Sequence record: NC_048674.1
Reading direction: 5' to 3' (one strand)
Length of the DNA stretch: 64,000 bases
Part shown: piece by piece, positions 41,189 through 61,666 of the stretch
Layout: every line of letters starts with the position of its first letter
Numbering within the stretch: position 1 is the stretch's first letter
The notes under the pieces: model-generated
What the model was told of the DNA's origin: nothing
Databases searched by the model: none
Seen by the model: only the letters and a program-made list of their open reading frames with translations
Made by a program: the position numbers and the translations under genes

Positions 41189-41905
41189 ATGGCTAAGATC
41201 AGCAAACAGGCGTTGAAACTCCATAATAAGGCTATGGATCTTGTTCACTCGGATAAGGAACTTTCATGGAATGAGCGTCTTTTTATCCTTGAGAATTACC
41301 AAGAAGGTGCTACCCAGATGAATGGCCTTGCTGGTGCATTCTTCACCCCAGTTATGTTAGCTCGTGATGCTATGATCGAAGTTAACCAAGACCGTTCTGT
41401 ATTGGATCTATGTGCTGGTATTGGTGGTCTGTCTTTCTGGTTGTATGACAACGATGTCACTTGTGTTGAGTTGAACCACGAATATTTTGAGGTTGGTAAA
41501 CGAGTCGTACCTCATGCAAACTGGATCCGTGGTGATGCACTGGAATACTGTGATAACACTAATGACCGGTTTGATTTTTGTATTAGCAATCCACCTTTTG
41601 GAAACATCAATACATCTGGTTATAAAGGTCGGTATACTGGCGCAGAATTCGAATATAAGGTAATAGAGGCCGCTAGTAAGGTATCTGAATTCGGGGTCTT
41701 TATTATCCCTCAGATGAGTGCTGGATTTAAATATAGCGGAGTACGTTCGTTCTGTGATAAAGAACCGTCAAATAAGTATTTGAAGTTTACCGAGCAAACA
41801 GGGATCCGTCTTGAACCGGGATGTGGTGTAGACACTTCGATTTATCTTTCTGAATGGCATGGGGTAAGTCCCATGGTCGAAATAGCAACAGCGGAATTTT
41901 ATTGA
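41189..41905 (+). CDS. DNA amino-methyltransferase (probably N6-adenine)
   Basis: GAFFTP (motif X), VLDLCAGIGGL (SAM binding), ISNPPFG (motif IV), gamma-type motif order. Confidence 0.85.
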   Translation: MAKISKQALKLHNKAMDLVHSDKELSWNERLFILENYQEGATQMNGLAGAFFTPVMLARDAMIEVNQDRSVLDLCAGIGGLSFWLYDNDVTCVELNHEYFEVGKRVVPHANWIRGDALEYCDNTNDRFDFCISNPPFGNINTSGYKGRYTGAEFEYKVIEAASKVSEFGVFIIPQMSAGFKYSGVRSFCDKEPSNKYLKFTEQTGIRLEPGCGVDTSIYLSEWHGVSPMVEIATAEFY

Positions 41906-52377: not shown

Positions 52378-55300
52378 ATGTATACACCACCTTTTAAGAG
52401 TTTTAACATTCCTGTTATAATTGATAATTTGGTTCTCGACCTCCCAGTAAACGAACACAAATATGACAAATTTGCTGTAACTGTAAACAATGATGGTCTG
52501 GTTGAACTTTGGCCCGAATCTTGCGTTTGTGTTGGTATTGTTTACAGTAAACAGTGTGGTTTCTATGTATGTGATGATTACAAAGGGTTTTGTTACGACA
52601 GTGAGATCCCAGTGGGTCGCATTGACCATGAAGACCCCAGTTCACTGGGATATCTAAATTGCATTTGGTTATTTGAACGTCCAGATGATGGGGTAATAAA
52701 TTTTATTTCTAAAAACATATTGACACCAGACGAAGAAAGTGTAGAATAAGGGTTGTAACGTTGATGGAGAGAAGATATGACAACCATTCACTGCAAACCA
52801 GATTATGTTGAGTTCTATCATGGTTCCTGTACTCTTGGTTTGAAAGGTAATATGTTGCTTCCTCCTGAGATGACTGATACAATTTCAGAGAAAGGTCGTA
52901 AGAAAAACTTAGACCGTGTGTTCTTCACTAAAGACCGTGGACTGGCAAAAGTATACGCACGTCGGGCGGCTCGTTCGATTGGTGGAGAACCAACTTTATT
53001 TCGTGTTGTGGCTCCAGTTGATACTGTGTTTATGAGTGAAACCCCCGGTGCTACCGTTTATCATGCCGCTTGGGCTTTTGTTGAACAAATCCCGTTCGGT
53101 AAACTTAGTGATTAAGAGGAAATTATGATGAAATTTGGACTTGATGAAGCTAACCTTGTTGTGAACCACCTGTTTCTTGACCAATCAGATGAAATTTTGG
53201 AAAAGATCCGGGACACTCGAAAGGGTGATATCAAGGATGAACCTTTCAAACTGACTGTCTTGATCAACGGCATCGAGATCGAACATGTCGAATCTTACGA
53301 AAACTTCATGAAATACCAGTATGAAGTTATGGAAAATCGGGTTAAAAAACAATACAACGTAGAAGCATTTGATCAACGGGTGCGAGAAGCGGCAGAACAA
53401 CTTATCAAATCTAAATTTGGCGATTTGATGAACAAAATGTATGATTTCGAAAATTCTGTTGATTTTTGTAATGATGTAATTGAAAAAGAATGGGGTATGT
53501 AATGAAAAAACTTCATGTAGAAAAACAAGTCATGAAAGACGTTGAAGGGGTTGTTGTTGAAGAGGGTAGCGGATTCAACCATAAATCCAAGCGTCTAGTT
53601 GTCTCCGTCATTAACAAAAAGAATGGTGTTGTGTCGCAACTTATTGCGTGTGTTACCGGGTTAACTGTTATTTTAGACCAGTTTAATATTCTTGGTGGTG
53701 TTCGCGTTACAGAGCATCATTCCAGTGGTACTGTTACTTATGTAACTGATGTGTCTGAGTTTGGAATGACTCTGAACGGTGATCTGTTTACAACCAAGAA
53801 AGAGAAAGTAACAGAATTTAAGGAACTGGAAGTCGGTGACCTTCTTACTATTGGTCTTCGTCGAAACAAAAATCCAAAAGATATTTCTGTTTCGTTTATT
53901 GGTCNNGATGGTTCNGCANTNGCAACTGATTACAANGGTAAATCATACTTCATCAANCGAAACGACCNAGANCAACTAAAGTCNCTGAAATTGAAACTNA
54001 TGTAATAAAGTGNTTGACATAACCAANCACACTCTGNTATTCTCTATCTCGTAAACAACAACGAGGAAATGACTATGAAAGAAGGTAGCAACGTACAGAT
54101 CAATAGCAATGTGATGAATGACGAAAGTCAACGTCATTTGTTTGGTGTGGTTGGTGTGGTTTCATACTACAATCCAGAGGTTTGGGTTGAGGTTACTTGG
54201 CCCAATGGTACTATCAGTGCATATGAAGAGAATGAACTGATCTGTCTTGACAAAGAAGAGAAGAAACCATTACCGGAAGTAGTACAACCTGAATCTGGAT
54301 ATGACGTTTCTTTTGTTGAAAAAGTAATCGAGAAAATCAATGATTACCATCGGGATTACCTTGAGCGTCATCCCCACGATTGGGACTGTTGTGGATTTTC
54401 CTCTGTGTATGTTGAATTTGGAAGAAAGAAAAAAGTAAAAGACCTTGTTTTGGGTCTCGGGTTTGAAATTGCGTATAAATCCGGTAAAGAGTCTTTCTTG
54501 NANCCAAAATTNANNATTCCNTATTGNGGTCATCAGTCNTTGACTTACAAAGAGGAAATCATGCAGATNATTTGTNANGAAATNAATNNTGTGGTTGGTG
54601 AAAAAGTTGCATANCGCAGCTCTTACATGGACTAATANAAGGAAAAANAATGAAAGCNTTTGTTTATAAATTNAAAACTCNAAAAGACCGGAAAGAGTTT
54701 ATCGGTCTAGCNAAAATTAATGATTGGATTGTTTCNAATTATCTGGTNGATTATCGTCTGACAGTTAACCAAGATAGCTTGAACNGACTTAANAGCGANG
54801 GTTANATTAGCCGTTTTATTGTTAATGGTGTATTGAAGGTAGACGAATTCAANACNATTGANNNTGACGAATTTNATAAATATTTNNNACTTGATAAAGA
54901 GATTGANNTTGAAGATCTNCCNAANCCTCGTCAGATTAGTGATGAGGAACTAATGGGTGGGGTCTGTAATGAGATTATTCTCAATAAAACACCAGTCGTT
55001 TCTAAGTTCGAGGGGAACAAACCCACATTTTCTGGGGATGTAACTAAACCTTTGAAGAAAAACGACGAAGGTCTTAACATAACAGGTAACCTAAAAATTG
55101 GTAATTGTCAGTTGACACCACTCGATCAAGCAATTTTCAATCTAGTTAACACACAAGGTAAACTTTCTCAAGATATGGAAATCAAAATTTCCATTAAAAA
55201 TGGTAAGGTGACATTCAGTGTATCCAAATGATCAATACCCACGTATGAACTTTGATACCATTTACCGTTTTCGGTCTGTAGAAGCGGCTCAAGAATATCG

Positions 55301-55769
55301 TACCAGTTGCGAACGTAATTTTTATAATTATGAAATTCTCAAGAATGGGTTCATTGTATTTCATATCGACGATGATGAAAATGTAATCGCGGTTTGTGAT
55401 ATTGAAGATAAGGAAAAGAAAAATCCAATCTATATCAATGATGGAACCGTTTTTATTAACCAAAAAGAGAGTTTTCTTTTTATTCCGTGTCGGTGTTAAA
55501 ATATGACAGTTAAAGAATTGAAGGATAAAGCCCGGTCTTTCGGGCTTGCTGCTGAAATTATTTTGAACAATGCAAAATATCGCGGGTTCAACGATTGGAT
55601 GTATGATTTCGTAACCCTTGACGAATCTCGTGGAATTACAGAAACAAACGTAGTTAAATTTTATTTTGTTAGCGGTGTTCATACCATTTCCCATCCAGTC
55701 AATATGGTTGTGTTGGGTCATTCACCGGAAAAAGTTATTGGTGAATTTCATAAGGATGTTATCGAATGA
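52378..55769 (+). other. Run of hypothetical ORFs
   Basis: 52378-52749, 53125-53502, 53490-54005, 54069-54635, 54650-55231, 55218-55499, 55503-55769. Confidence 0.6.
52777..53115 (+). CDS. Small ADP-ribosyltransferase-fold protein (Arr / Tpt1-like, H-Y type)
   Basis: FYHGS...G..LLPP...VFFT...LAKVYA..AA...GEP.LFRV, the pattern of Arr-like ARTs. Confidence 0.65.
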   Translation: MTTIHCKPDYVEFYHGSCTLGLKGNMLLPPEMTDTISEKGRKKNLDRVFFTKDRGLAKVYARRAARSIGGEPTLFRVVAPVDTVFMSETPGATVYHAAWAFVEQIPFGKLSD

Positions 55770-56425
55770 CCATAAAATGGAGGGATTACGAATTATCTTT
55801 ATGTGAAAGAAAAGAAATAAAGGAATTCGTAGAAGCTCATCATTACTCTCATAATATCAATGGTCTAAAAACATCATATTGTTTTCGGATTGATGATAAA
55901 AATGGGAAATTGGTTGGGGCTGTTATATTTGGACAACTTAGTACAACTGCATGGAAAAAGTTTTCTGATAAAGAGGATGATGTATTAGAATTACGGAGAC
56001 TAGTGCTGTTGGACGAGCTACCTCATAATTCCGAATCGTGGGTCATTGGTTCTTGTCTGAGAATATTGAAAAAATTAAAAACTCATAAAGTTGTAATTAG
56101 TTATGCAGATCCGTTTCATGACCATGTTGGTATTATATATCAAGCAACAAACTGGATATATGTGGGTGAAACGCCTAAAGATAAACTACTAAAAACACCA
56201 GATGGTAAGTTGTATCACAGTAGGGCATTGAGAACAAAATATAAAGGTATGTTGAAACCTTTTGCACAAAGACTACAATATATGAAAAATAATGGTCTTC
56301 TAGAAGAAGTAGTAGTACCGGGAAAACATAGTTATGTTTATCCGTTAGTTCATATTAAAAAACTTGATAAAGTTAACCAGATGGAACAAAAACAATATCC
56401 AAAGCAAAGAGATATAGAAAAATGA
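55766..56425 (+). CDS. Mom-like DNA adenine modification protein (GNAT fold)
   Basis: HHYS, LVGAVIFG, LELRRLVL...P.NSESWVIG, VISYADP..DHVGIIYQATNWIYVG. Confidence 0.8.
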   Translation: MTIKWRDYELSLCERKEIKEFVEAHHYSHNINGLKTSYCFRIDDKNGKLVGAVIFGQLSTTAWKKFSDKEDDVLELRRLVLLDELPHNSESWVIGSCLRILKKLKTHKVVISYADPFHDHVGIIYQATNWIYVGETPKDKLLKTPDGKLYHSRALRTKYKGMLKPFAQRLQYMKNNGLLEEVVVPGKHSYVYPLVHIKKLDKVNQMEQKQYPKQRDIEK

Positions 56426-56916
56426 AAATTCGTTATGTTAAAGGCGATATGATCGCCATGATGAAAGACCCAGAAGTATTGAAGATTCCAACTTTGTTCG
56501 TTCATGGGTGTAATTGTCATACTGCAATGGGTTCCGGTATTGCTGCTGGTATTGCCATGAACTTCCCAGATGCGCCTATTGTAGACGCACATTTCCAACG
56601 GCTGTTTAAGACAAACGGTCAAGTGGATATTGGAATGCTTGGTCAATATAGTTGGACTCCCTTAGATTATGATTCTCGATTGATTAACCTATACACCCAA
56701 TATTTCCCCGGTCGCGATCTTCGTTTGGATGCATTAGAGAATGGTTTCGTCCACTTAGCGGAAGATTTTGGATATGAAGGGTATCGACTTATATTCCCAA
56801 AGATTGGGGCTGGTGTTGCCGGTGGAGATTGGGATGTTATCTCACAAGTAATTGAAAATTGTTTTGACGAAGACGATTTCGAAGAATTGATTTGTGTCGA
56901 ATGGGATAAAAAGTAA
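56422..56916 (+). CDS. Macrodomain protein (Tk.4-like ADP-ribose binding or hydrolase)
   Basis: YVKGDM, VHGCNC..AMGSGIA.GIA..FP, INLYTQ, FPKIGAGVAGGDW. Confidence 0.88.
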   Translation: MKIRYVKGDMIAMMKDPEVLKIPTLFVHGCNCHTAMGSGIAAGIAMNFPDAPIVDAHFQRLFKTNGQVDIGMLGQYSWTPLDYDSRLINLYTQYFPGRDLRLDALENGFVHLAEDFGYEGYRLIFPKIGAGVAGGDWDVISQVIENCFDEDDFEELICVEWDKK

Positions 56917-56920
56917 TCAT

Positions 56921-56974
56921 TATCTCCCAAAGGCTCTAACCTAAATAAGGTTGGAGCCTTTTTATTTGGAGATA
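56921..56974 (+). promoter_or_regulatory. Late promoter (CTAAATA 56941-56947) in the loop of a terminator / RBS-sequestering hairpin
   Basis: Inner stem aggctctaacc/ggttggagcct. Outer arm tatctcccaa pairs with tttggagata, which contains the SD. Confidence 0.75.
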
Positions 56975-56980
56975 TTAATA

Positions 56981-57358
56981 ATGGTAAGATACAAGGCAAT
57001 TATATTTGGGATTCTTCTTATTTTGGTTGGTGGGTCTACTTGGTATATGTTCAACAAGATCGAATCACAGGCAATAACAATCGGAGAGATGACCCAACAA
57101 CTAGAAACAATGACATCCAAATTATCCGCCATGGAATTGAGTATAAGCGATTTCAAACAACAGTCTAGCGAGTATAGTCAGACGGAAGAGAAATCGAATA
57201 GAGAGCTTTCTAAGCGCATTGGTACGCTGGAATCTAATGCTAGTCGCGGTAAGGATGCAATAGACAAGAAACCTAAGCTAGTAGAGAAGATAATCCAGAA
57301 GGATTATGAAGAGTTTGGAAGCAGAATGGATTGCCTTACTCTGGGGGAATGTAAATGA
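56981..57358 (+). CDS. Rz-like inner-membrane spanin (PseT.3-like)
   Basis: N-terminal TM helix, long coiled coil, overlap with the downstream lipoprotein. Confidence 0.8.
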   Translation: MVRYKAIIFGILLILVGGSTWYMFNKIESQAITIGEMTQQLETMTSKLSAMELSISDFKQQSSEYSQTEEKSNRELSKRIGTLESNASRGKDAIDKKPKLVEKIIQKDYEEFGSRMDCLTLGECK

Positions 57359-57654
57359 AAAAAATTCTAATTATGATGTGTATAGTGGTTCTTGCTGCAT
57401 GTTCAACACCACCGAGACCAGACCCGGTATTAGTGTTTCATCCAAATAGACCAACACCGGTCAAAACTTATATTCCGAAATGGACTGTTATTAAGGAAGG
57501 TGAAACAACATATGTCGGAATGACATATGAGGATAGTTTAAGATATAGGGCGTGGCTGGAAAAAATAGGTGTTTATATAGACTCACAAAATAGAATGTTA
57601 TGTTCTTATAGAAAGGATCTGAAAGAACCACAATGTCAAAAAGTCCCCAAATAA
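57355..57654 (+). CDS. Rz1-like outer-membrane spanin lipoprotein (PseT.2-like)
   Basis: Lipobox LAAC, Pro-rich stretch, VGMTYEDS...W...I..YI..Q..MLC.YR..L.E..C. Confidence 0.85.
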   Translation: MKKILIMMCIVVLAACSTPPRPDPVLVFHPNRPTPVKTYIPKWTVIKEGETTYVGMTYEDSLRYRAWLEKIGVYIDSQNRMLCSYRKDLKEPQCQKVPK

Positions 57655-57677
57655 GGGACTTTTTTGTTACCTAAATA
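57638..57677 (+). promoter_or_regulatory. Terminator followed by late promoter CTAAATA (57671-57677)
   Basis: aagtccc/gggactt stem with T run, then acctaaata upstream of the tail fibre RBS. Confidence 0.75.
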
Positions 57678-57715
57678 AAAGAGTAGAAACAATTTCAAAA
57701 TAGAGGAATTTAAAA

Positions 57716-60700
57716 ATGGCAGACCTTAAGAGTTCGTCTACCGCTGGGGGTGGATTAGTTTGGACACAGACTAACCTACCATTTTCCCCGCAAGACGTTA
57801 AGCTGTTTTATAATGGTAATGAGGTTATTGATAGTGTTAGTAATCAATCTATTGGTGGGGCTAAAACCTTTACCGGAACATTGACATATAAAACTCCTGT
57901 CAATTCTAATGAAGTTGCCATTAAAGGTTATGTTGATAACCTAGATAGTACATCGGTGAAATCTGTAACCGGGACTCTCCCAATCGTCGTTACTACTGGT
58001 GTAAGTCCGCGAGTTTCAATTAATAACGCAACGCAATCCGCTCATGGGGCAATGAGCAAAGAAGATAAGACAAAGCTAGACGGTTTACCTGTTCGAGCTG
58101 TTAATAGAGATGGCGATACTATGACTGGAAACCTAATGGTTAATGGTCAGGTTGAGGCGAATAGAATCAAATCCAACGGTCAAGTTGAAGTTTATGATTC
58201 TGCTACCAATACATACGCACAGCGTATGGTTGCATCTGGTTCATTACTTTATTTCCAAGGTGGTAAAGTAGATAGAGACGTTACTGACCAACGAGTTGCT
58301 TTTAGTGGTTGGTATGGTACACCTCTCACTCAAGTAAGATTTAATATGGCTACTGGGGTTAATCCCCAAGTGTCTTATGGAAATACAAACTATGATATTT
58401 TCCATAAAGGTAATTTGCCTAGCGCGGAAGAAGTAAAGGCAATGGCTGTATATGATCGTCCACCGGAAGATGATTGCGATAAAGCAATTATGCCCGGTAA
58501 CTATGGTGTTTTCGCAAACACAAAAAATACTCCTAACGACGGTGGTACTGGTCCTAGTGGATCAACTCTCCTTGTTACCCGTTGGGGTAACGGGGCGAAT
58601 GCACAAATATTCTTTTCTTATACACAAGATCGTGTATGGGTTCGTCGTCAATATATCGGTGTTTGGCAGCCATGGGCGGAAATGTATACCTCTCTGAACA
58701 AACAGTCTGTGGGTGGTATGGGTCTTGGTGTTGGTGATAGTCCCAACGCGATCACAGTAACCGGTGGTGTTCGTGACTTCAACCTAATTAAGACCAACGG
58801 TGTTTTTACAGTTGATGGTAACTGGGCTAATGGAACTGACAATACCGCAACTGCAACTACTCATACGGGTATTGTTGAGGTTAAACAACGATCTTTCGAT
58901 AACTTGACTGTTCAGAAATTCAGTAACTGGGTAACAGTCGGTGGATTTGTAGAACCAAGAGAGTTTACAAGGGTATGGATTAATGCAGTTGAAGGTTGGC
59001 AACCATGGTTACCGACTGGTGTGTGGGAACAGGTAAACACATACAGAACTGGTATTCTAAGACACAATAACTCTACTAATGACGACTCTGTTTATCCTTA
59101 CGTATCTTATACCAAGGAAAAATATCGTGATGGTGTTGCTGCTGGTATTCCATACACAATAGGTGAGGTTAGTTTTAGAGTTGGTGCTACAAACCGATAT
59201 GATCCCCATAGTGGCGATCAGTTGTCTAGAATTATAGGTCAAGCAACAAACACAAACACAACCGGTGAATATGAAGGTACTTTGTTCTTAGCTTCTAGAT
59301 ATCGCAAAGGGTCTGATGGTTCGACTGCTGACACTAGTACACTAAGAATAAGTAGAGATGTTGGTGCTGAATTTACCCATGCAGGTAAGAAAGTACAGAT
59401 CGAAACCGGTAATGTGAATGCAGAGAAATTTATTGTAACCACAACTGGTTATGCACTTCAATATTCCGGTAATGCAAACCAAGGAATCTATTTAGATAAT
59501 AGAACAATTATTGGTGGTGGTTCATCTGGTGTTGTGATTCGTCCAAATGGTTCGGGAACTGTAACTGGGGAAACTGTCTTTAATGCAAACGGTACTATAT
59601 CAAATAACCAAGTTCCGACGTTGGCAATGCATTTAACAAACAAGGCATATGTTGATGGTGTTGCTCTTGGTGGTTTTAGTTCTATTATCACACTGAGAGA
59701 TACAGATAACCTCAACGATATTAAAACCGCTGGTATATATAGCCAAGTTGCTAACGCTAAAGCATTAACTAGTTTGAACTATCCAGTTGAGAAAGCTGGT
59801 AACCTTATTGTTACTACTTCCGCTGGCGTTATTCAAAAATATTGGGTATATAACTCGTCCGAAGTTTGGTCTAGAGCACAATATTCAAGTGGTGCGTGGA
59901 AGCCTTGGTATCGTGACTATAACGAAGAGTTTAAACCTACTTCCGCTGATGTTGGGGCGTTGTCTTTAACTGGTGGTACTGTAACTGGGGATGTTAGATT
60001 TAACTCTGGCAACACCACTAGATTGACTCTTGGTAGTGGTTCTGATTATTACGTCGAACGCTCACCATCTGGATTGACATTAGCTTCTGGAACTATCAAT
60101 CCGAAGGTTAAAGTTAATAACACAGATTATGACATATATCATACCGGCAATAAACCATCAGCCGCCGACGTTGGTACATTAACAACTACACAGATAAACA
60201 CAGAGCTTAACAAAAAGCTTAATCTGTCTGGTGGTATCATGACTGGCGCAATTCGTTGGGATGCAACAGATGAATATATCAACGCCGCGAGCAACAATAT
60301 ATATCTGGCTGCTAAGACTGGTACTGTATATCTTGAAAGCAAAAATAACCCAATGGTAAGGATTGGAAGTAACGATTACACCATATATCACACTGGTAAT
60401 AAACCTTCTGCTGGTGATTTTAATGCATACACAAAAACTGAAACAGATAATTTACTTAATACTAAATTAAATCTGTCTGGTGGCACTCTAACTGGAGCGG
60501 TAACTACTGCAACCATAAAGAATGCTGTTATGATTAACAATGGTGCATCGATTAGTTTCCAAGACGGAGCTAATGCTAGATTCCATATACTGACAGAAGG
60601 TAACACCTTTAAACTAAAACATGGAGACAATGCCGATAATCAGCTACTATACGTTAGCCCCACAGTAATGGAATTACAAACACAATTAAGTGCAAGAACT

Positions 60701-61666
60701 GCAATGTTTGTGAGTGGAGCTGATGGAACTCGGGTGTTTGGGATTGGTGCTCAAGAATCCAACGGAATAAACCCATACGTGTATGTACGAAGATCTGGTG
60801 ATACTGGAAACATACGTGTTCTGACATTTGATCAGGGTGAGATTATTGCTAACCAAGATCGAATCGCTGCTCCAACTTTCCGAGTTATTAACAACGCAGG
60901 ATTACAGTTCTCCCCAAATAGTAACCGGAGTGGTGTGACTTGGGGGATGGGTATGGATCTATCTAATGGTAACCTTGGTATCCATCGTTATCAAGATGGT
61001 GTATGGAATCTCCAACCATTTATGATAGGTTCGAACGGTGTGGTTACTATGAGTACGGGTTTCAACACAACCAGCGGAACAATGTCTGGTTCCCTAAGTG
61101 TTAATGGAAACATTGAGGTTGGTGGATCTGTAGGTGTTAATAGTGGTTATGCCTCTATCATTAGCAATAATAATAACAGACTAGAATTTCATCGTCCCGG
61201 ATTTTGGGCAACAATGATTTACATGAACACAGACGGTCAACTTCGATTTACATCAAGTAATGGTGCCGGTGGTGAAACTAAACTCAGAATGTCTATTGAT
61301 AACAATGGTAATACCGGAATAGCAGGTTCTGTTAACGCTAATGGTGGTGTTCACGACGTAGGTCAACGAGTTTATTCACCAAGTAACCCAATTCCAGATG
61401 GTGTAATACTGAGATCAGTCGTCAATGGCGGCGGCAATATGGATATTGGTTCATATGCGATGGTCACAGTCAAATCCAACCTTGGTCCACAAGGTCCGGG
61501 GACTGTTCTCCAAGGTACTCAGATTGCATTCTCGAACGCGGAAGGTACTAATATGGTTGCCTGTAACTATGGTACATGGCGTCTGATGGGTGTTTCTAGA
61601 GCAAATTCCCAAAACGGCGACGGTTGGGGTTCTTGGAACGTAACATTGGCACAGCGGATAACTTAA
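57716..61666 (+). CDS. 36: Long tail fibre distal subunit (gp36-type N-terminus, several knob domains)
   Basis: MADLKSSSTAGGGLVWTQTNLP resembles T4 gp36 MADLKVGSTTGGSVIWHQGNFP. It has three knob-like W..W domains, YH.GNKPSA and LNLSGG..TG repeats, and a C-terminal GTWRLMG...TLAQRIT. Confidence 0.8.
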   Translation: MADLKSSSTAGGGLVWTQTNLPFSPQDVKLFYNGNEVIDSVSNQSIGGAKTFTGTLTYKTPVNSNEVAIKGYVDNLDSTSVKSVTGTLPIVVTTGVSPRVSINNATQSAHGAMSKEDKTKLDGLPVRAVNRDGDTMTGNLMVNGQVEANRIKSNGQVEVYDSATNTYAQRMVASGSLLYFQGGKVDRDVTDQRVAFSGWYGTPLTQVRFNMATGVNPQVSYGNTNYDIFHKGNLPSAEEVKAMAVYDRPPEDDCDKAIMPGNYGVFANTKNTPNDGGTGPSGSTLLVTRWGNGANAQIFFSYTQDRVWVRRQYIGVWQPWAEMYTSLNKQSVGGMGLGVGDSPNAITVTGGVRDFNLIKTNGVFTVDGNWANGTDNTATATTHTGIVEVKQRSFDNLTVQKFSNWVTVGGFVEPREFTRVWINAVEGWQPWLPTGVWEQVNTYRTGILRHNNSTNDDSVYPYVSYTKEKYRDGVAAGIPYTIGEVSFRVGATNRYDPHSGDQLSRIIGQATNTNTTGEYEGTLFLASRYRKGSDGSTADTSTLRISRDVGAEFTHAGKKVQIETGNVNAEKFIVTTTGYALQYSGNANQGIYLDNRTIIGGGSSGVVIRPNGSGTVTGETVFNANGTISNNQVPTLAMHLTNKAYVDGVALGGFSSIITLRDTDNLNDIKTAGIYSQVANAKALTSLNYPVEKAGNLIVTTSAGVIQKYWVYNSSEVWSRAQYSSGAWKPWYRDYNEEFKPTSADVGALSLTGGTVTGDVRFNSGNTTRLTLGSGSDYYVERSPSGLTLASGTINPKVKVNNTDYDIYHTGNKPSAADVGTLTTTQINTELNKKLNLSGGIMTGAIRWDATDEYINAASNNIYLAAKTGTVYLESKNNPMVRIGSNDYTIYHTGNKPSAGDFNAYTKTETDNLLNTKLNLSGGTLTGAVTTATIKNAVMINNGASISFQDGANARFHILTEGNTFKLKHGDNADNQLLYVSPTVMELQTQLSARTAMFVSGADGTRVFGIGAQESNGINPYVYVRRSGDTGNIRVLTFDQGEIIANQDRIAAPTFRVINNAGLQFSPNSNRSGVTWGMGMDLSNGNLGIHRYQDGVWNLQPFMIGSNGVVTMSTGFNTTSGTMSGSLSVNGNIEVGGSVGVNSGYASIISNNNNRLEFHRPGFWATMIYMNTDGQLRFTSSNGAGGETKLRMSIDNNGNTGIAGSVNANGGVHDVGQRVYSPSNPIPDGVILRSVVNGGGNMDIGSYAMVTVKSNLGPQGPGTVLQGTQIAFSNAEGTNMVACNYGTWRLMGVSRANSQNGDGWGSWNVTLAQRIT

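What the first reader, a model, noticed from the sequence alone, without database searches (positions are those of the whole stretch)
55766..56916. Translationally coupled Mom-like adenine modifier and macrodomain genes in a T4-like phage
Seen: a Mom-like GNAT ORF overlaps by ATGA with a macrodomain ORF. Known: phage Mu Mom hypermodifies adenine to block restriction enzymes, T-even phages instead use hydroxymethylcytosine, and macrodomains such as DarG remove ADP-ribose from DNA or protein. Inference: this is a DNA-shielding and repair cassette, with adenine hypermodification against restriction and a macrodomain reversing DarT-like ADP-ribosylation. A Mom-type modification in this lineage would be unusual.
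Basis: partly seen in the sequence, partly recalled or inferred. Interest (0 to 1): 0.7.

Follow-up and report, generated by a model that had tools for sequence, protein, structure and literature searches.

The report
Mom and AdfM-like macrodomain, adjacent but independent
In Aeromonas phage AS-sw, an optional Mom-type DNA-adenine modifier sits directly before a widely conserved T4 Tk.4/AdfM-type macrodomain gene; both look like real anti-defence genes, but they are neighbours by a gene-sized insertion or deletion, not a co-evolved cassette.

Summary
The window is Aeromonas phage AS-sw (Straboviridae, Ceceduovirus). ORF 55766-56425 is a full-length Mom-family protein: Pfam PF25680 E 3e-40, and its AlphaFold model best matches Mu Mom 8BV8 (TM 0.75). 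ORF 56422-56916 is a macrodomain, and the two overlap by ATGA.

The "cassette" reading is not supported.
- Five of twelve sequenced Ceceduovirus genomes lack mom through an identical, precise 656-bp indel flanked by AATGA. In those genomes the upstream 88-aa ORF overlaps the macrodomain gene through the same ATGA.
- None of seven other Mom contexts examined has a macrodomain neighbour.
- ATGA overlaps are routine here (17 in the window).

The macrodomain is a homologue of T4 Tk.4 (32% identity, E 6e-23). Tk.4 was named AdfM in 2026 as T4's anti-DarTG2 factor, and homologues occur in more than 2,200 phage records.

Mom is under strong purifying selection (dN/dS about 0.05). It keeps Mu residues H58, Y59, R111, S124, D149 and Y159, but not the essential R151. 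Its product is therefore probably, not certainly, N6-carbamoylmethyl-adenine.

Mom is already annotated in this record, and the Mom family was already reported in T4-related jumbo phages. This is a new member of known kinds, of modest interest. The most useful point is that natural mom-plus and mom-minus phage pairs exist.

The parts
55503..55769 (+). 88-aa ORF of unknown function (PHROG 17527). It is present in both mom-plus and mom-minus relatives. Its stop overlaps the mom start by ATGA, and its 3' end carries the AAGGA Shine-Dalgarno-like motif that serves mom here and the macrodomain gene in mom-minus phages. It is not a Com homologue: it has no cysteines and no Pfam Com hit.
55766..56425 (+). 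Stand-alone Mom-family GNAT (219 aa), predicted to be a tRNA-dependent DNA N6-adenine glycyl/carbamoylmethyl transferase. It is an accessory gene found in 7 of 12 Ceceduovirus genomes.
   Evidence: Pfam PF25680 E 3e-40. phmmer to 8bv8 E 2e-8. AF2 pLDDT 94.9. Foldseek 8bv8_A E 7e-14, TM 0.75, against TM 0.52 or less for other GNATs. Residue mapping in A2. dN/dS 0.05-0.07.
55765..55769 (+). Left copy of the 5-bp direct repeat AATGA that bounds the 656-bp mom indel.
56421..56425 (+). Right copy of the AATGA direct repeat. Mom-minus genomes keep a single copy.
56422..56916 (+). Tk.4/AdfM-type macrodomain protein (164 aa) with conserved H28, N31, Q93 and the P126-W137 glycine-rich loop. Predicted ADP-ribosyl hydrolase countering DarT2-type DNA ADP-ribosylation.
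   Evidence: Pfam Macro 23.1 bits and PHROG 335 E 5e-49. 32% identity, E 6e-23, full length to T4 Tk.4. AF2 pLDDT 93.9. Foldseek matches to Poa1p, TARG1 and DarG, TM 0.69-0.79. Alignment A3.
56929..56961 (+). Intrinsic-terminator hairpin (14-bp stem followed by a T-run) that ends the transcription unit directly after the macrodomain gene.
   Evidence: RNA fold -28.6 kcal/mol, z -6.8, 0 of 200 shuffles as stable
54014..54043 (+). Candidate sigma-70/early-type promoter (TTGACA-18-TATTCT with TG), the nearest upstream of the gene array; another lies at 52720-52747. These are consensus matches only.
   Evidence: The overall number of such matches is no higher than in shuffled sequence. No T4 late-promoter TATAAATA lies within 4.7 kb.

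Best explanation
These are two separate counter-defence genes that happen to lie side by side at the 3' end of an early-type, terminator-bounded gene array in Aeromonas phage AS-sw.

(1) Mom. The gene encodes a stand-alone Mom-family GNAT. By analogy with Mu Mom, it transfers glycine from Gly-tRNA(Gly) to N6 of adenines in double-stranded phage DNA after replication. The glycyl group then rearranges to N6-carbamoylmethyl-adenine, which blocks restriction enzymes. Mom is an optional gene in the genus: it is present or absent as a precise 656-bp block bounded by AATGA, and it is kept under purifying selection where present.

(2) Macrodomain. The gene is the Ceceduovirus counterpart of T4 tk.4 (adfM). 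It most likely removes ADP-ribose placed on phage DNA thymidines by DarT2-type toxins. It is retained in all relatives whether or not mom is there.

(3) The overlaps. ATGA is this genome's ordinary gene-packing mode. In mom-plus phages the good Shine-Dalgarno motif (AAGGA) serves mom, and the macrodomain start has only a weak AGAG upstream. Macrodomain translation is therefore probably coupled to mom termination. That is a by-product of the insertion geometry, not evidence of shared function.

Shown here: gene identities, folds, conserved residues, the indel and its distribution, selection, and the terminator. Inferred: the chemistry of the DNA modification, the ADP-ribosyl-DNA hydrolase activity, expression timing and translational coupling.
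For: Mom identity: Pfam and PHROG hits. The model matches Mu Mom 8BV8 far better than any other GNAT. The region corresponding to the Mom-specific insertion is present and highly conserved in the sequence alignments. Mu residues H58, Y59, R111, S124, D149 and Y159 map to H26, Y27, R78, S91, D115 and Y125, which are invariant or nearly so in 70 homologues. Their functional importance comes from PMC13219725.

Independence: mom is absent from CC2, Assk, Asswx_1, Aszh-1 and AP1 through the same 656-bp gap, with AATGA at both ends in the mom-plus genomes. Mom-minus Assk is 99.8% (left flank) and 98.4% (right flank) identical to AS-sw, while mom-plus AS-zj is only 93.5% identical on the left. Seven other Mom contexts lack a macrodomain.

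Selection and origin: three mom alleles differ by 7-9% in nucleotides but have dN/dS of 0.05-0.07. Mom GC3 is 21.9% against 33-42% in its neighbours.

Macrodomain: full-length similarity to T4 Tk.4; 2,272 phage records hold a homologue, often annotated tk.4, phosphatase or macro domain. A T4 tk.4 knockout is sensitised to DarTG2 (PMC13716836). The model falls in the Poa1p/TARG1/DarG structural neighbourhood.

Transcription unit: terminator and no late promoter nearby. ATGA overlaps are common. Mom-plus junctions were also seen intact in contigs from four further public runs, with no mom-less joint.
Against: No direct evidence exists for any modified base in these phages, or for enzymatic activity of either protein.

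Mom: the AS-sw protein is only 22% identical to Mu Mom. It lacks Mu R151 (F117 here; essential in Mu), W48 (the dimer contact) and W181, so donor, product or target sequence may differ.

Macrodomain: the protein and T4 Tk.4 both have an invariant Gln where DarG has its catalytic Lys80. The best structural match is the yeast ADP-ribose-1''-phosphate phosphatase Poa1p rather than DarG. The T4 evidence is genetic, not biochemical.

Other limits: I did not test whether Aeromonas hosts carry DarTG2. The direction of the indel (gain or loss) is unresolved. The promoter assignment rests on consensus matches that are no more frequent than in shuffled sequence.
Confidence: 0.72

Rival explanations
1. 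One reading: mom and the macrodomain gene form a co-adapted, translationally coupled DNA-shielding and repair cassette whose two activities are functionally linked.
For: The two genes overlap by ATGA and lie in one terminator-bounded unit. Both are plausibly anti-defence genes acting on DNA. The macrodomain start has only a weak ribosome-binding motif in mom-plus genomes, so its translation may depend on mom.
Against: Five close relatives lack mom but keep the macrodomain gene, joined by the same ATGA to the upstream ORF. No macrodomain lies next to Mom in seven other genomic contexts. The macrodomain family is found in more than 2,200 phage records, Mom in 234. ATGA overlaps occur at 17 junctions in the window.
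Confidence: 0.06
2. The Mom-like enzyme belongs to a subfamily with different chemistry. It may use another aminoacyl-tRNA or an acyl-CoA, install a different N6-adenine adduct, recognise a different sequence context, or act on RNA rather than DNA.
For: It is only 22% identical to Mu Mom. Mu R151 (essential), W48 and W181 are replaced by F117, E and L149. The subfamily has its own nearly invariant motif (D115, P116, H120, G122) and a longer, highly conserved stretch in place of the Mu insertion. PMC13219725 states that co-substrate and substrate could not be predicted from structure or alignments.
Against: Six of the nine functionally important Mu residues are invariant or nearly so, including R111, S124 and D149. 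The fold, over an alignment that spans nearly the whole protein, matches Mu Mom specifically. Metagenomic Mom homologues picked at random were active (PMC13219725), though their subfamily is unknown to me.
Confidence: 0.2
3. The macrodomain protein is a Poa1p-like ADP-ribose-1''-phosphate phosphatase, or a scavenger of soluble ADP-ribose metabolites or signals. It would be tied to tRNA repair or NAD-centred conflicts, not a DNA de-ADP-ribosylase.
For: The top structural and sequence matches are yeast Poa1p. Poa1p H23 corresponds to the invariant H28. DarG's catalytic Lys is replaced by the invariant Q93. PHROG and RefSeq call the family 'phosphatase'. The phage encodes RNA ligase in the same window. 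PMC7824862 proposes this role for jumbo-phage macrodomains.
Against: T4 tk.4, which shares the same H/N/Q motifs, was the single significant hit needed by T4 to resist DarTG2, and its knockout was sensitised (PMC13716836). TARG1 and DarG are nearly as close structurally as Poa1p.
Confidence: 0.18

Closest known systems
Phage Mu Mom (PDB 8BV8; Pfam PF25680), the tRNA-dependent DNA N6-adenine glycyl/carbamoylmethyl transferase
   Same: Same Pfam family over its full length. GNAT fold, with the stretch corresponding to the Mom-specific insertion present and conserved in the sequence alignments. Equivalents of H58, Y59, R111, S124, D149 and Y159 are conserved. Phage-encoded and presumably anti-restriction.
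   Different: 22% identity. No equivalents of R151, W48 or W181. No N-terminal 32-residue extension. No Com translational activator, and none of the Dam/OxyR/C-controlled late expression context: it sits in an early-type operon of a virulent T4-like phage. The closest relatives (51-63% identity) are from uncultured large phages and Salmonella siphophages, not Mu-like phages.
T4 Tk.4 = AdfM (anti-DarT factor macrodomain; PMC13716836)
   Same: 32% identity over the whole length. Same size. Same motifs: HGCNC...MGSG, NLYTQ and the P(K/R)IGAG loop. Stand-alone macrodomain in a T4-like phage early region.
   Different: Different genomic position. In T4 it lies between tk.3 and vs; here it lies between an array of unknown ORFs and the pseT.3/pseT.2-like spanins, with tk about 5 kb away on the other strand. 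Activity is untested here.
DarG antitoxin macrodomain (T. aquaticus or M. tuberculosis DarG, PDB 5M3E/5M3I) and PhiKZ AdfM gp104
   Same: Macrodomain fold (TM about 0.69). The Asn equivalent to DarG N22 is conserved. The glycine-rich diphosphate-binding loop is conserved.
   Different: Catalytic Lys80 is replaced by an invariant Gln. There is no C-terminal DarT-binding domain. The NCBIfam DarG model scores 26 bits against a cut-off of 250.
Yeast Poa1p ADP-ribose-1''-phosphate phosphatase (PDB 6LFQ-6LFU)
   Same: Best sequence and Foldseek match in the PDB (TM 0.73). The equivalent of His23 is conserved (H28).
   Different: The equivalents of Poa1p S30 and F152 are Ala here (A35, A133). About 23% identity. 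The biological context is entirely different.

Membership tests
Mom family (PF25680; prototype Mu Mom) | Family HMM score above the curated cut-off, over the full length | tested here: met
   138.5 bits against 27.1, profile positions 2-202 of 202. Mu Mom itself scores 253 bits.
Mom family (PF25680; prototype Mu Mom) | GNAT fold, with Mu Mom as the closest solved structure | tested here: met
   AF2 pLDDT 94.9. Foldseek 8bv8_A E 7e-14, TM 0.75 over 229 columns; the next GNAT has E 1e-6 and TM about 0.5.
Mom family (PF25680; prototype Mu Mom) | Mom-specific HTH-like insertion (Mu residues about 175-209) | tested here: inconclusive
   The corresponding stretch, about residues 143-185, is present and highly conserved in the sequence alignments, and the Foldseek alignment to 8BV8 spans nearly the whole protein. 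I did not inspect the model's fold in that segment.
Mom family (PF25680; prototype Mu Mom) | Catalytic or essential residues R111, S124 and D149, plus H58, Y59 and Y159 | tested here: met
   They map to R78, S91, D115, H26, Y27 and Y125, invariant or at least 90% conserved in 20- and 70-sequence alignments. The residue roles are from PMC13219725.
Mom family (PF25680; prototype Mu Mom) | Essential R151, dimer residue W48 and W181 of Mu Mom | tested here: not met
   They align with F117, a Glu and L149. The whole subfamily has an aromatic residue at the R151 position.
Mom family (PF25680; prototype Mu Mom) | Produces N6-carbamoylmethyl-dA in dsDNA using Gly-tRNA(Gly) | not testable with these tools
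   Needs LC-MS of nucleosides or an in vitro assay.
T4 Tk.4 / AdfM-type phage macrodomain | Macrodomain fold | tested here: met
   pLDDT 93.9. 199 PDB matches with E of 0.001 or better, the listed top 50 almost all macrodomains. Pfam Macro is just above its cut-off.
T4 Tk.4 / AdfM-type phage macrodomain | Full-length sequence similarity and shared motifs with T4 Tk.4 | tested here: met
   BLASTP 32% identity, E 6e-23, residues 1-162 against 1-152. The shared HGCNC, NLYTQ and IGAG motifs are seen.
T4 Tk.4 / AdfM-type phage macrodomain | Same genomic position as T4 tk.4 (between tk.3 and vs) | tested here: not met
   Here it lies between an 88-aa ORF (or mom) and the spanin genes. The CC2 record nevertheless annotates it as 'similar to Tk.4'.
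T4 Tk.4 / AdfM-type phage macrodomain | Protects the phage from DarTG2 | not testable with these tools
   Shown only for T4 (PMC13716836).
DarG antitoxin (NF048014) | Equivalog HMM score; catalytic Lys80; C-terminal DarT-binding domain | tested here: not met
   26 bits against a cut-off of 250. K80 aligns with the invariant Q93. The protein is 164 aa with no second domain.
Poa1p-like ADP-ribose-1''-phosphate phosphatase | Residues mutated in the Poa1p structures (H23, S30, F152) | tested here: inconclusive
   H23 corresponds to the invariant H28; S30 and F152 correspond to A35 and A133. Poa1p is the best Foldseek hit, TM 0.73.

The most novel reading that the evidence does not exclude
The Ceceduovirus Mom represents a Mom subfamily that lacks Mu's essential R151 and has its own conserved His-rich motif. 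It might install a different adenine hypermodification, or use a different aminoacyl-tRNA, in a T4-like lineage. That lineage has Alc and DenA homologues but no known enzymes for non-canonical bases (PMC8056088). The naturally occurring mom-plus and mom-minus phages with nearly identical flanking sequence (AS-sw against Assk, 99.8% and 98.4% flank identity) would then expose an undescribed DNA modification and its cost or benefit in a virulent phage.
Probability: 0.12. Interest if true: 0.6.

Novelty: new member of a known kind. Interest (0 to 1): 0.27.

Why it matters
Practically, it matters for annotation. The AS-sw "hypothetical protein" at 56422-56916 can be labelled as a Tk.4/AdfM-type macrodomain, a candidate anti-DarTG2 factor. 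The mom gene should be treated as an accessory marker that splits otherwise near-identical Aeromonas therapeutic phage candidates. These phages were isolated for cocktails against the fish pathogen A. salmonicida, so a gene likely to alter sensitivity to host restriction systems bears on host-range differences between cocktail members. Scientifically, the natural mom-plus and mom-minus pairs offer a clean way to test what a Mom-type modification does for a virulent T4-like phage. They also allow a test of a Mom subfamily that lacks one of Mu Mom's essential residues. None of this overturns current understanding.

Tried and rejected
(1) Com-like regulator. The upstream 88-aa and 93-aa ORFs have no Com or zinc-finger signature, and the 88-aa ORF is also present in mom-minus phages. 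Rejected.

(2) Mom-macrodomain co-occurrence elsewhere. Six of the closest metagenomic Mom contexts and Pantoea phage Phynn show no macrodomain within 4-6 kb.

(3) Late-promoter control. No TATAAATA lies near the genes. The sigma-70-like matches are no more frequent than in shuffles, so the promoter assignment stays tentative.

(4) Phage-encoded tRNA(Gly) as the Mom co-substrate. The window has no tRNA genes; the rest of the genome was not scanned.

(5) Supplementary data of the Mom paper. I wanted to place the tested active homologues relative to this subfamily, but no supplements are held.

(6) Public reads. Four runs hold mom-plus contigs bridging both junctions, and no mom-less joint was seen. 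One run is labelled 'RNA?' but is stored as contigs only, so it does not show transcription.

(7) AsSzw2 macrodomain. An apparent frameshift lies in a stretch full of N in an UNVERIFIED record, so no conclusion was drawn.

(8) Direction of the indel. The AATGA repeats fit either loss by microhomology or seamless gain. Flank identities do not follow mom presence, which points to recombination or repeated events. I did not build a formal tree or run a recombination test.

(9) I did not check the whole AS-sw genome for cytosine-modification genes. I relied on PMC8056088 for the statement that related phages have DenA and Alc homologues but no known enzymes for non-canonical bases.
Full report
**What is there**

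The window matches Aeromonas phage AS-sw (NC_048674 / MF498775) at 100% identity and in the same coordinates. AS-sw is a 230-kb member of Straboviridae, Emmerichvirinae, genus Ceceduovirus.

Seventeen annotated junctions in the 64-kb window read ATGA. The overlap by itself therefore says nothing about shared function.

**The Mom-like gene**

- It matches Pfam PF25680 (Mom) at 138.5 bits against a cut-off of 27.1, across the whole profile. It also matches PHROG 1384, "Mom-like DNA modification protein", at E 6e-69.
- phmmer finds the Mu Mom crystal structure 8BV8 as the only PDB sequence match (E 2e-8).
- An AlphaFold2 model built on 70 homologues has mean pLDDT 94.9.
- Foldseek places 8BV8 first (E 7e-14, TM 0.75 over 229 columns). 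Ordinary GNATs follow at E of 1e-6 or worse and TM of about 0.5.

The 2026 paper on Mom (PMC13219725) shows three relevant things. Mom transfers glycine from Gly-tRNA(Gly) to N6 of adenine in dsDNA, and the glycyl group then rearranges to N6-carbamoylmethyl-dA. H58, Y59, R111, S124, D149, R151, Y159, W48 and W181 matter for activity. A Mom-specific HTH-like insertion (residues about 175-209) is indispensable.

In my alignments, six of these residues have counterparts: H26, Y27, R78, S91, D115 and Y125. All are invariant or nearly so in the subfamily. The stretch corresponding to the insertion is present and strongly conserved in sequence. I did not inspect the model's fold in that segment.

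R151, W48 and W181 correspond to F117, a Glu and L149. Overall identity to Mu Mom is 22%. Family membership is therefore solid, but the exact product and sequence specificity are an inference.

**Mom is an optional gene**

Megablast of 55200-57700 against phage genomes found 12 distinct Ceceduovirus phages.

- Seven carry mom: AS-sw, AS-yj, AS-zj, AS-szw, P19, G2 and AsSzw2.
- Five lack it: CC2, Assk, Asswx_1, Aszh-1 and AP1.

In all five mom-minus genomes the gap is the same 656 bp. The 88-aa ORF then overlaps the macrodomain gene through the same ATGA. In mom-plus genomes the block is bounded by a 5-bp direct repeat, AATGA, at 55765-55769 and 56421-56425.

Presence does not follow flank similarity. 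Mom-minus Assk is 99.8% (left flank) and 98.4% (right flank) identical to AS-sw. Mom-plus AS-zj is only 93.5% identical on the left, yet its mom is 99.7% identical to AS-sw's.

There are three mom alleles, differing by 7-9% at the nucleotide level (dS 0.33-0.47). Their dN/dS is 0.05-0.07. The gene has therefore been resident for a while and is under purifying selection. Its GC3 of 21.9%, against 33-42% in its neighbours, suggests a foreign origin.

The geometry fits either seamless gain or loss by microhomology, followed by recombinational reshuffling. I could not decide between these. Contigs from four further public runs carry the mom-plus arrangement across both junctions.

**Is Mom linked to a macrodomain elsewhere?**

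No. The six closest metagenomic homologues with usable context (51-63% identity) sit next to RNR, thymidylate synthase (Thy1), RecJ-like, DNA ligase, methyltransferase or tRNA-repair genes. None is within 4-6 kb of a macrodomain. Pantoea phage Phynn, another Straboviridae member, has a Mom homologue next to a DNA methyltransferase.

By tblastn, Mom occurs in 234 phage records and the macrodomain family in 2,272.

**The macrodomain gene**

- Pfam Macro is only just above threshold, at 23.1 against 22 bits. PHROG 335 is strong, at E 5e-49.
- The AlphaFold2 model has pLDDT 93.9.
- Foldseek gives yeast Poa1p (TM 0.73), TARG1, BT1257 (TM 0.79), SCO6735 and DarG (TM 0.69), all at probability 1.0.

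CC2's orthologue is annotated "similar to Tk.4". BLASTP against T4 Tk.4 gives 32% identity, E 6e-23, end to end.

The HIDEN-SEQ study (PMC13716836) found tk.4 to be the single T4 gene needed on a DarTG2 host. It confirmed this with a knockout and named the gene adfM. A DarG-like AdfM in PhiKZ removes ADP-ribose from TNTC-modified DNA in vitro (PMC13309987).

There is a caveat. In the Tk.4-type proteins, including T4's and this one, the Asn equivalent to DarG N22 is kept (N31), but DarG's catalytic Lys80 is replaced by an invariant Gln (Q93). An invariant His (H28) matches Poa1p H23. The protein is not a DarG: the NCBIfam DarG model scores 26 bits against a cut-off of 250, and there is no DarT-binding domain. 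A Poa1p-like phosphatase role remains a live alternative.

**Expression context**

A strong hairpin with a T-run follows the macrodomain stop at 56929-56961. It folds at -28.6 kcal/mol, z -6.8. No T4-type late promoter lies nearby. The nearest sigma-70-like matches are at 54014 and 52720, but such matches are no more common here than in shuffled sequence.

The genes thus appear to close an early-type array of small ORFs that starts after asiA. This contrasts with Mu, where mom is late and controlled by Com. No Com-like protein is present.

The AAGGA motif 9 nt upstream of the ATGA junction serves the macrodomain gene in mom-minus phages and mom in mom-plus phages. The macrodomain start in AS-sw has only a weak AGAG upstream. 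Coupling to mom termination is therefore plausible, but it is a consequence of the insertion geometry.

**Novelty**

Mom is already labelled "Mom" or "Mom-like DNA modification protein" in the AS-sw GenBank and RefSeq records. Iyer et al. 2021 reported Mom-family enzymes in group 2 jumbo phages, the group related to T4 (PMC7824862). They describe those as typically fused to nuclease domains, whereas this one is stand-alone. The papers describing AS-sw and P19 do not discuss Mom. A survey of non-canonical bases in T4-like phages lists AS-szw, AS-zj and Asswx_1 as having DenA and Alc homologues but no known base-modification enzyme (PMC8056088).

What this analysis adds:
- the precise mom presence/absence polymorphism;
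- evidence against a cassette;
- assignment of the "hypothetical" macrodomain protein to the Tk.4/AdfM type;
- the observation that this Mom subfamily lacks Mu's R151.

**Verdict**

This is a new member of known kinds, of modest interest.

Noticed in passing
window 317-54925 (clusters at 0-1 kb, 14 kb, 21-37 kb, 52-55 kb): The window holds 206 N characters scattered singly and in short runs. They put X residues into several ORFs just upstream of the finding (53502..55231). None lies in mom or the macrodomain gene.
   Followed up: partly
L016 (Aeromonas phage Asswx_1) 1432-2436, compared with window 53502..54005: By its annotation, Asswx_1 lacks the homologue of the 504-bp ORF at 53502..54005 (CC2 gene 380), while the genes on either side keep their positions. 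This is a second gene-sized, seemingly precise indel in the same early-gene array.
   Followed up: partly
L008 2548-7264 (Logan contig SRR33375183_15796, 134 kb): A 57%-identical Mom homologue lies directly upstream of a PolyA_pol-family nucleotidyltransferase, which may be a CCA-adding enzyme. It is near a PNKP-like kinase/phosphatase, Gad2-family proteins and several DNA methyltransferases. A tRNA-repair neighbourhood would fit Mom's tRNA dependence.
   Followed up: no
L006 2294-3567 (Pantoea phage Phynn, Straboviridae): A second T4-like lineage carries a stand-alone Mom homologue (48% identity), placed immediately after a DNA methyltransferase gene.
   Followed up: partly
window 41189..41905 (+): An ORF annotated as DNA methyltransferase, with weak Pfam hits to MTS and N6_Mtase. 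It may be a second adenine-directed DNA modification gene in the same phage.
   Followed up: partly
window 56981..57358 and 57355..57654 (+): An Rz/Rz1-type spanin pair (PHROG 739 and 812; annotated in CC2 as similar to PseT.3 and PseT.2) directly follows the terminator. It is itself joined by ATGA and is followed by a 1316-aa tail-fibre gene at 57716..61666.
   Followed up: partly
L014 (Aeromonas phage AsSzw2), region aligned to window 56422-56916: The macrodomain gene in this UNVERIFIED record is riddled with N and has a 5-nt gap that would shift the frame. This is probably poor sequence quality rather than a real pseudogene.
   Followed up: partly
L018 (Aeromonas phage AP1) 1-2438 and 4858-7205: AP1 differs from the other Ceceduovirus genomes on both sides of the region. 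Tail-completion genes lie upstream on the opposite strand, and small ORFs replace the long tail-fibre gene downstream. Iyer et al. 2021 already suspected a chimeric assembly for AP1.
   Followed up: no
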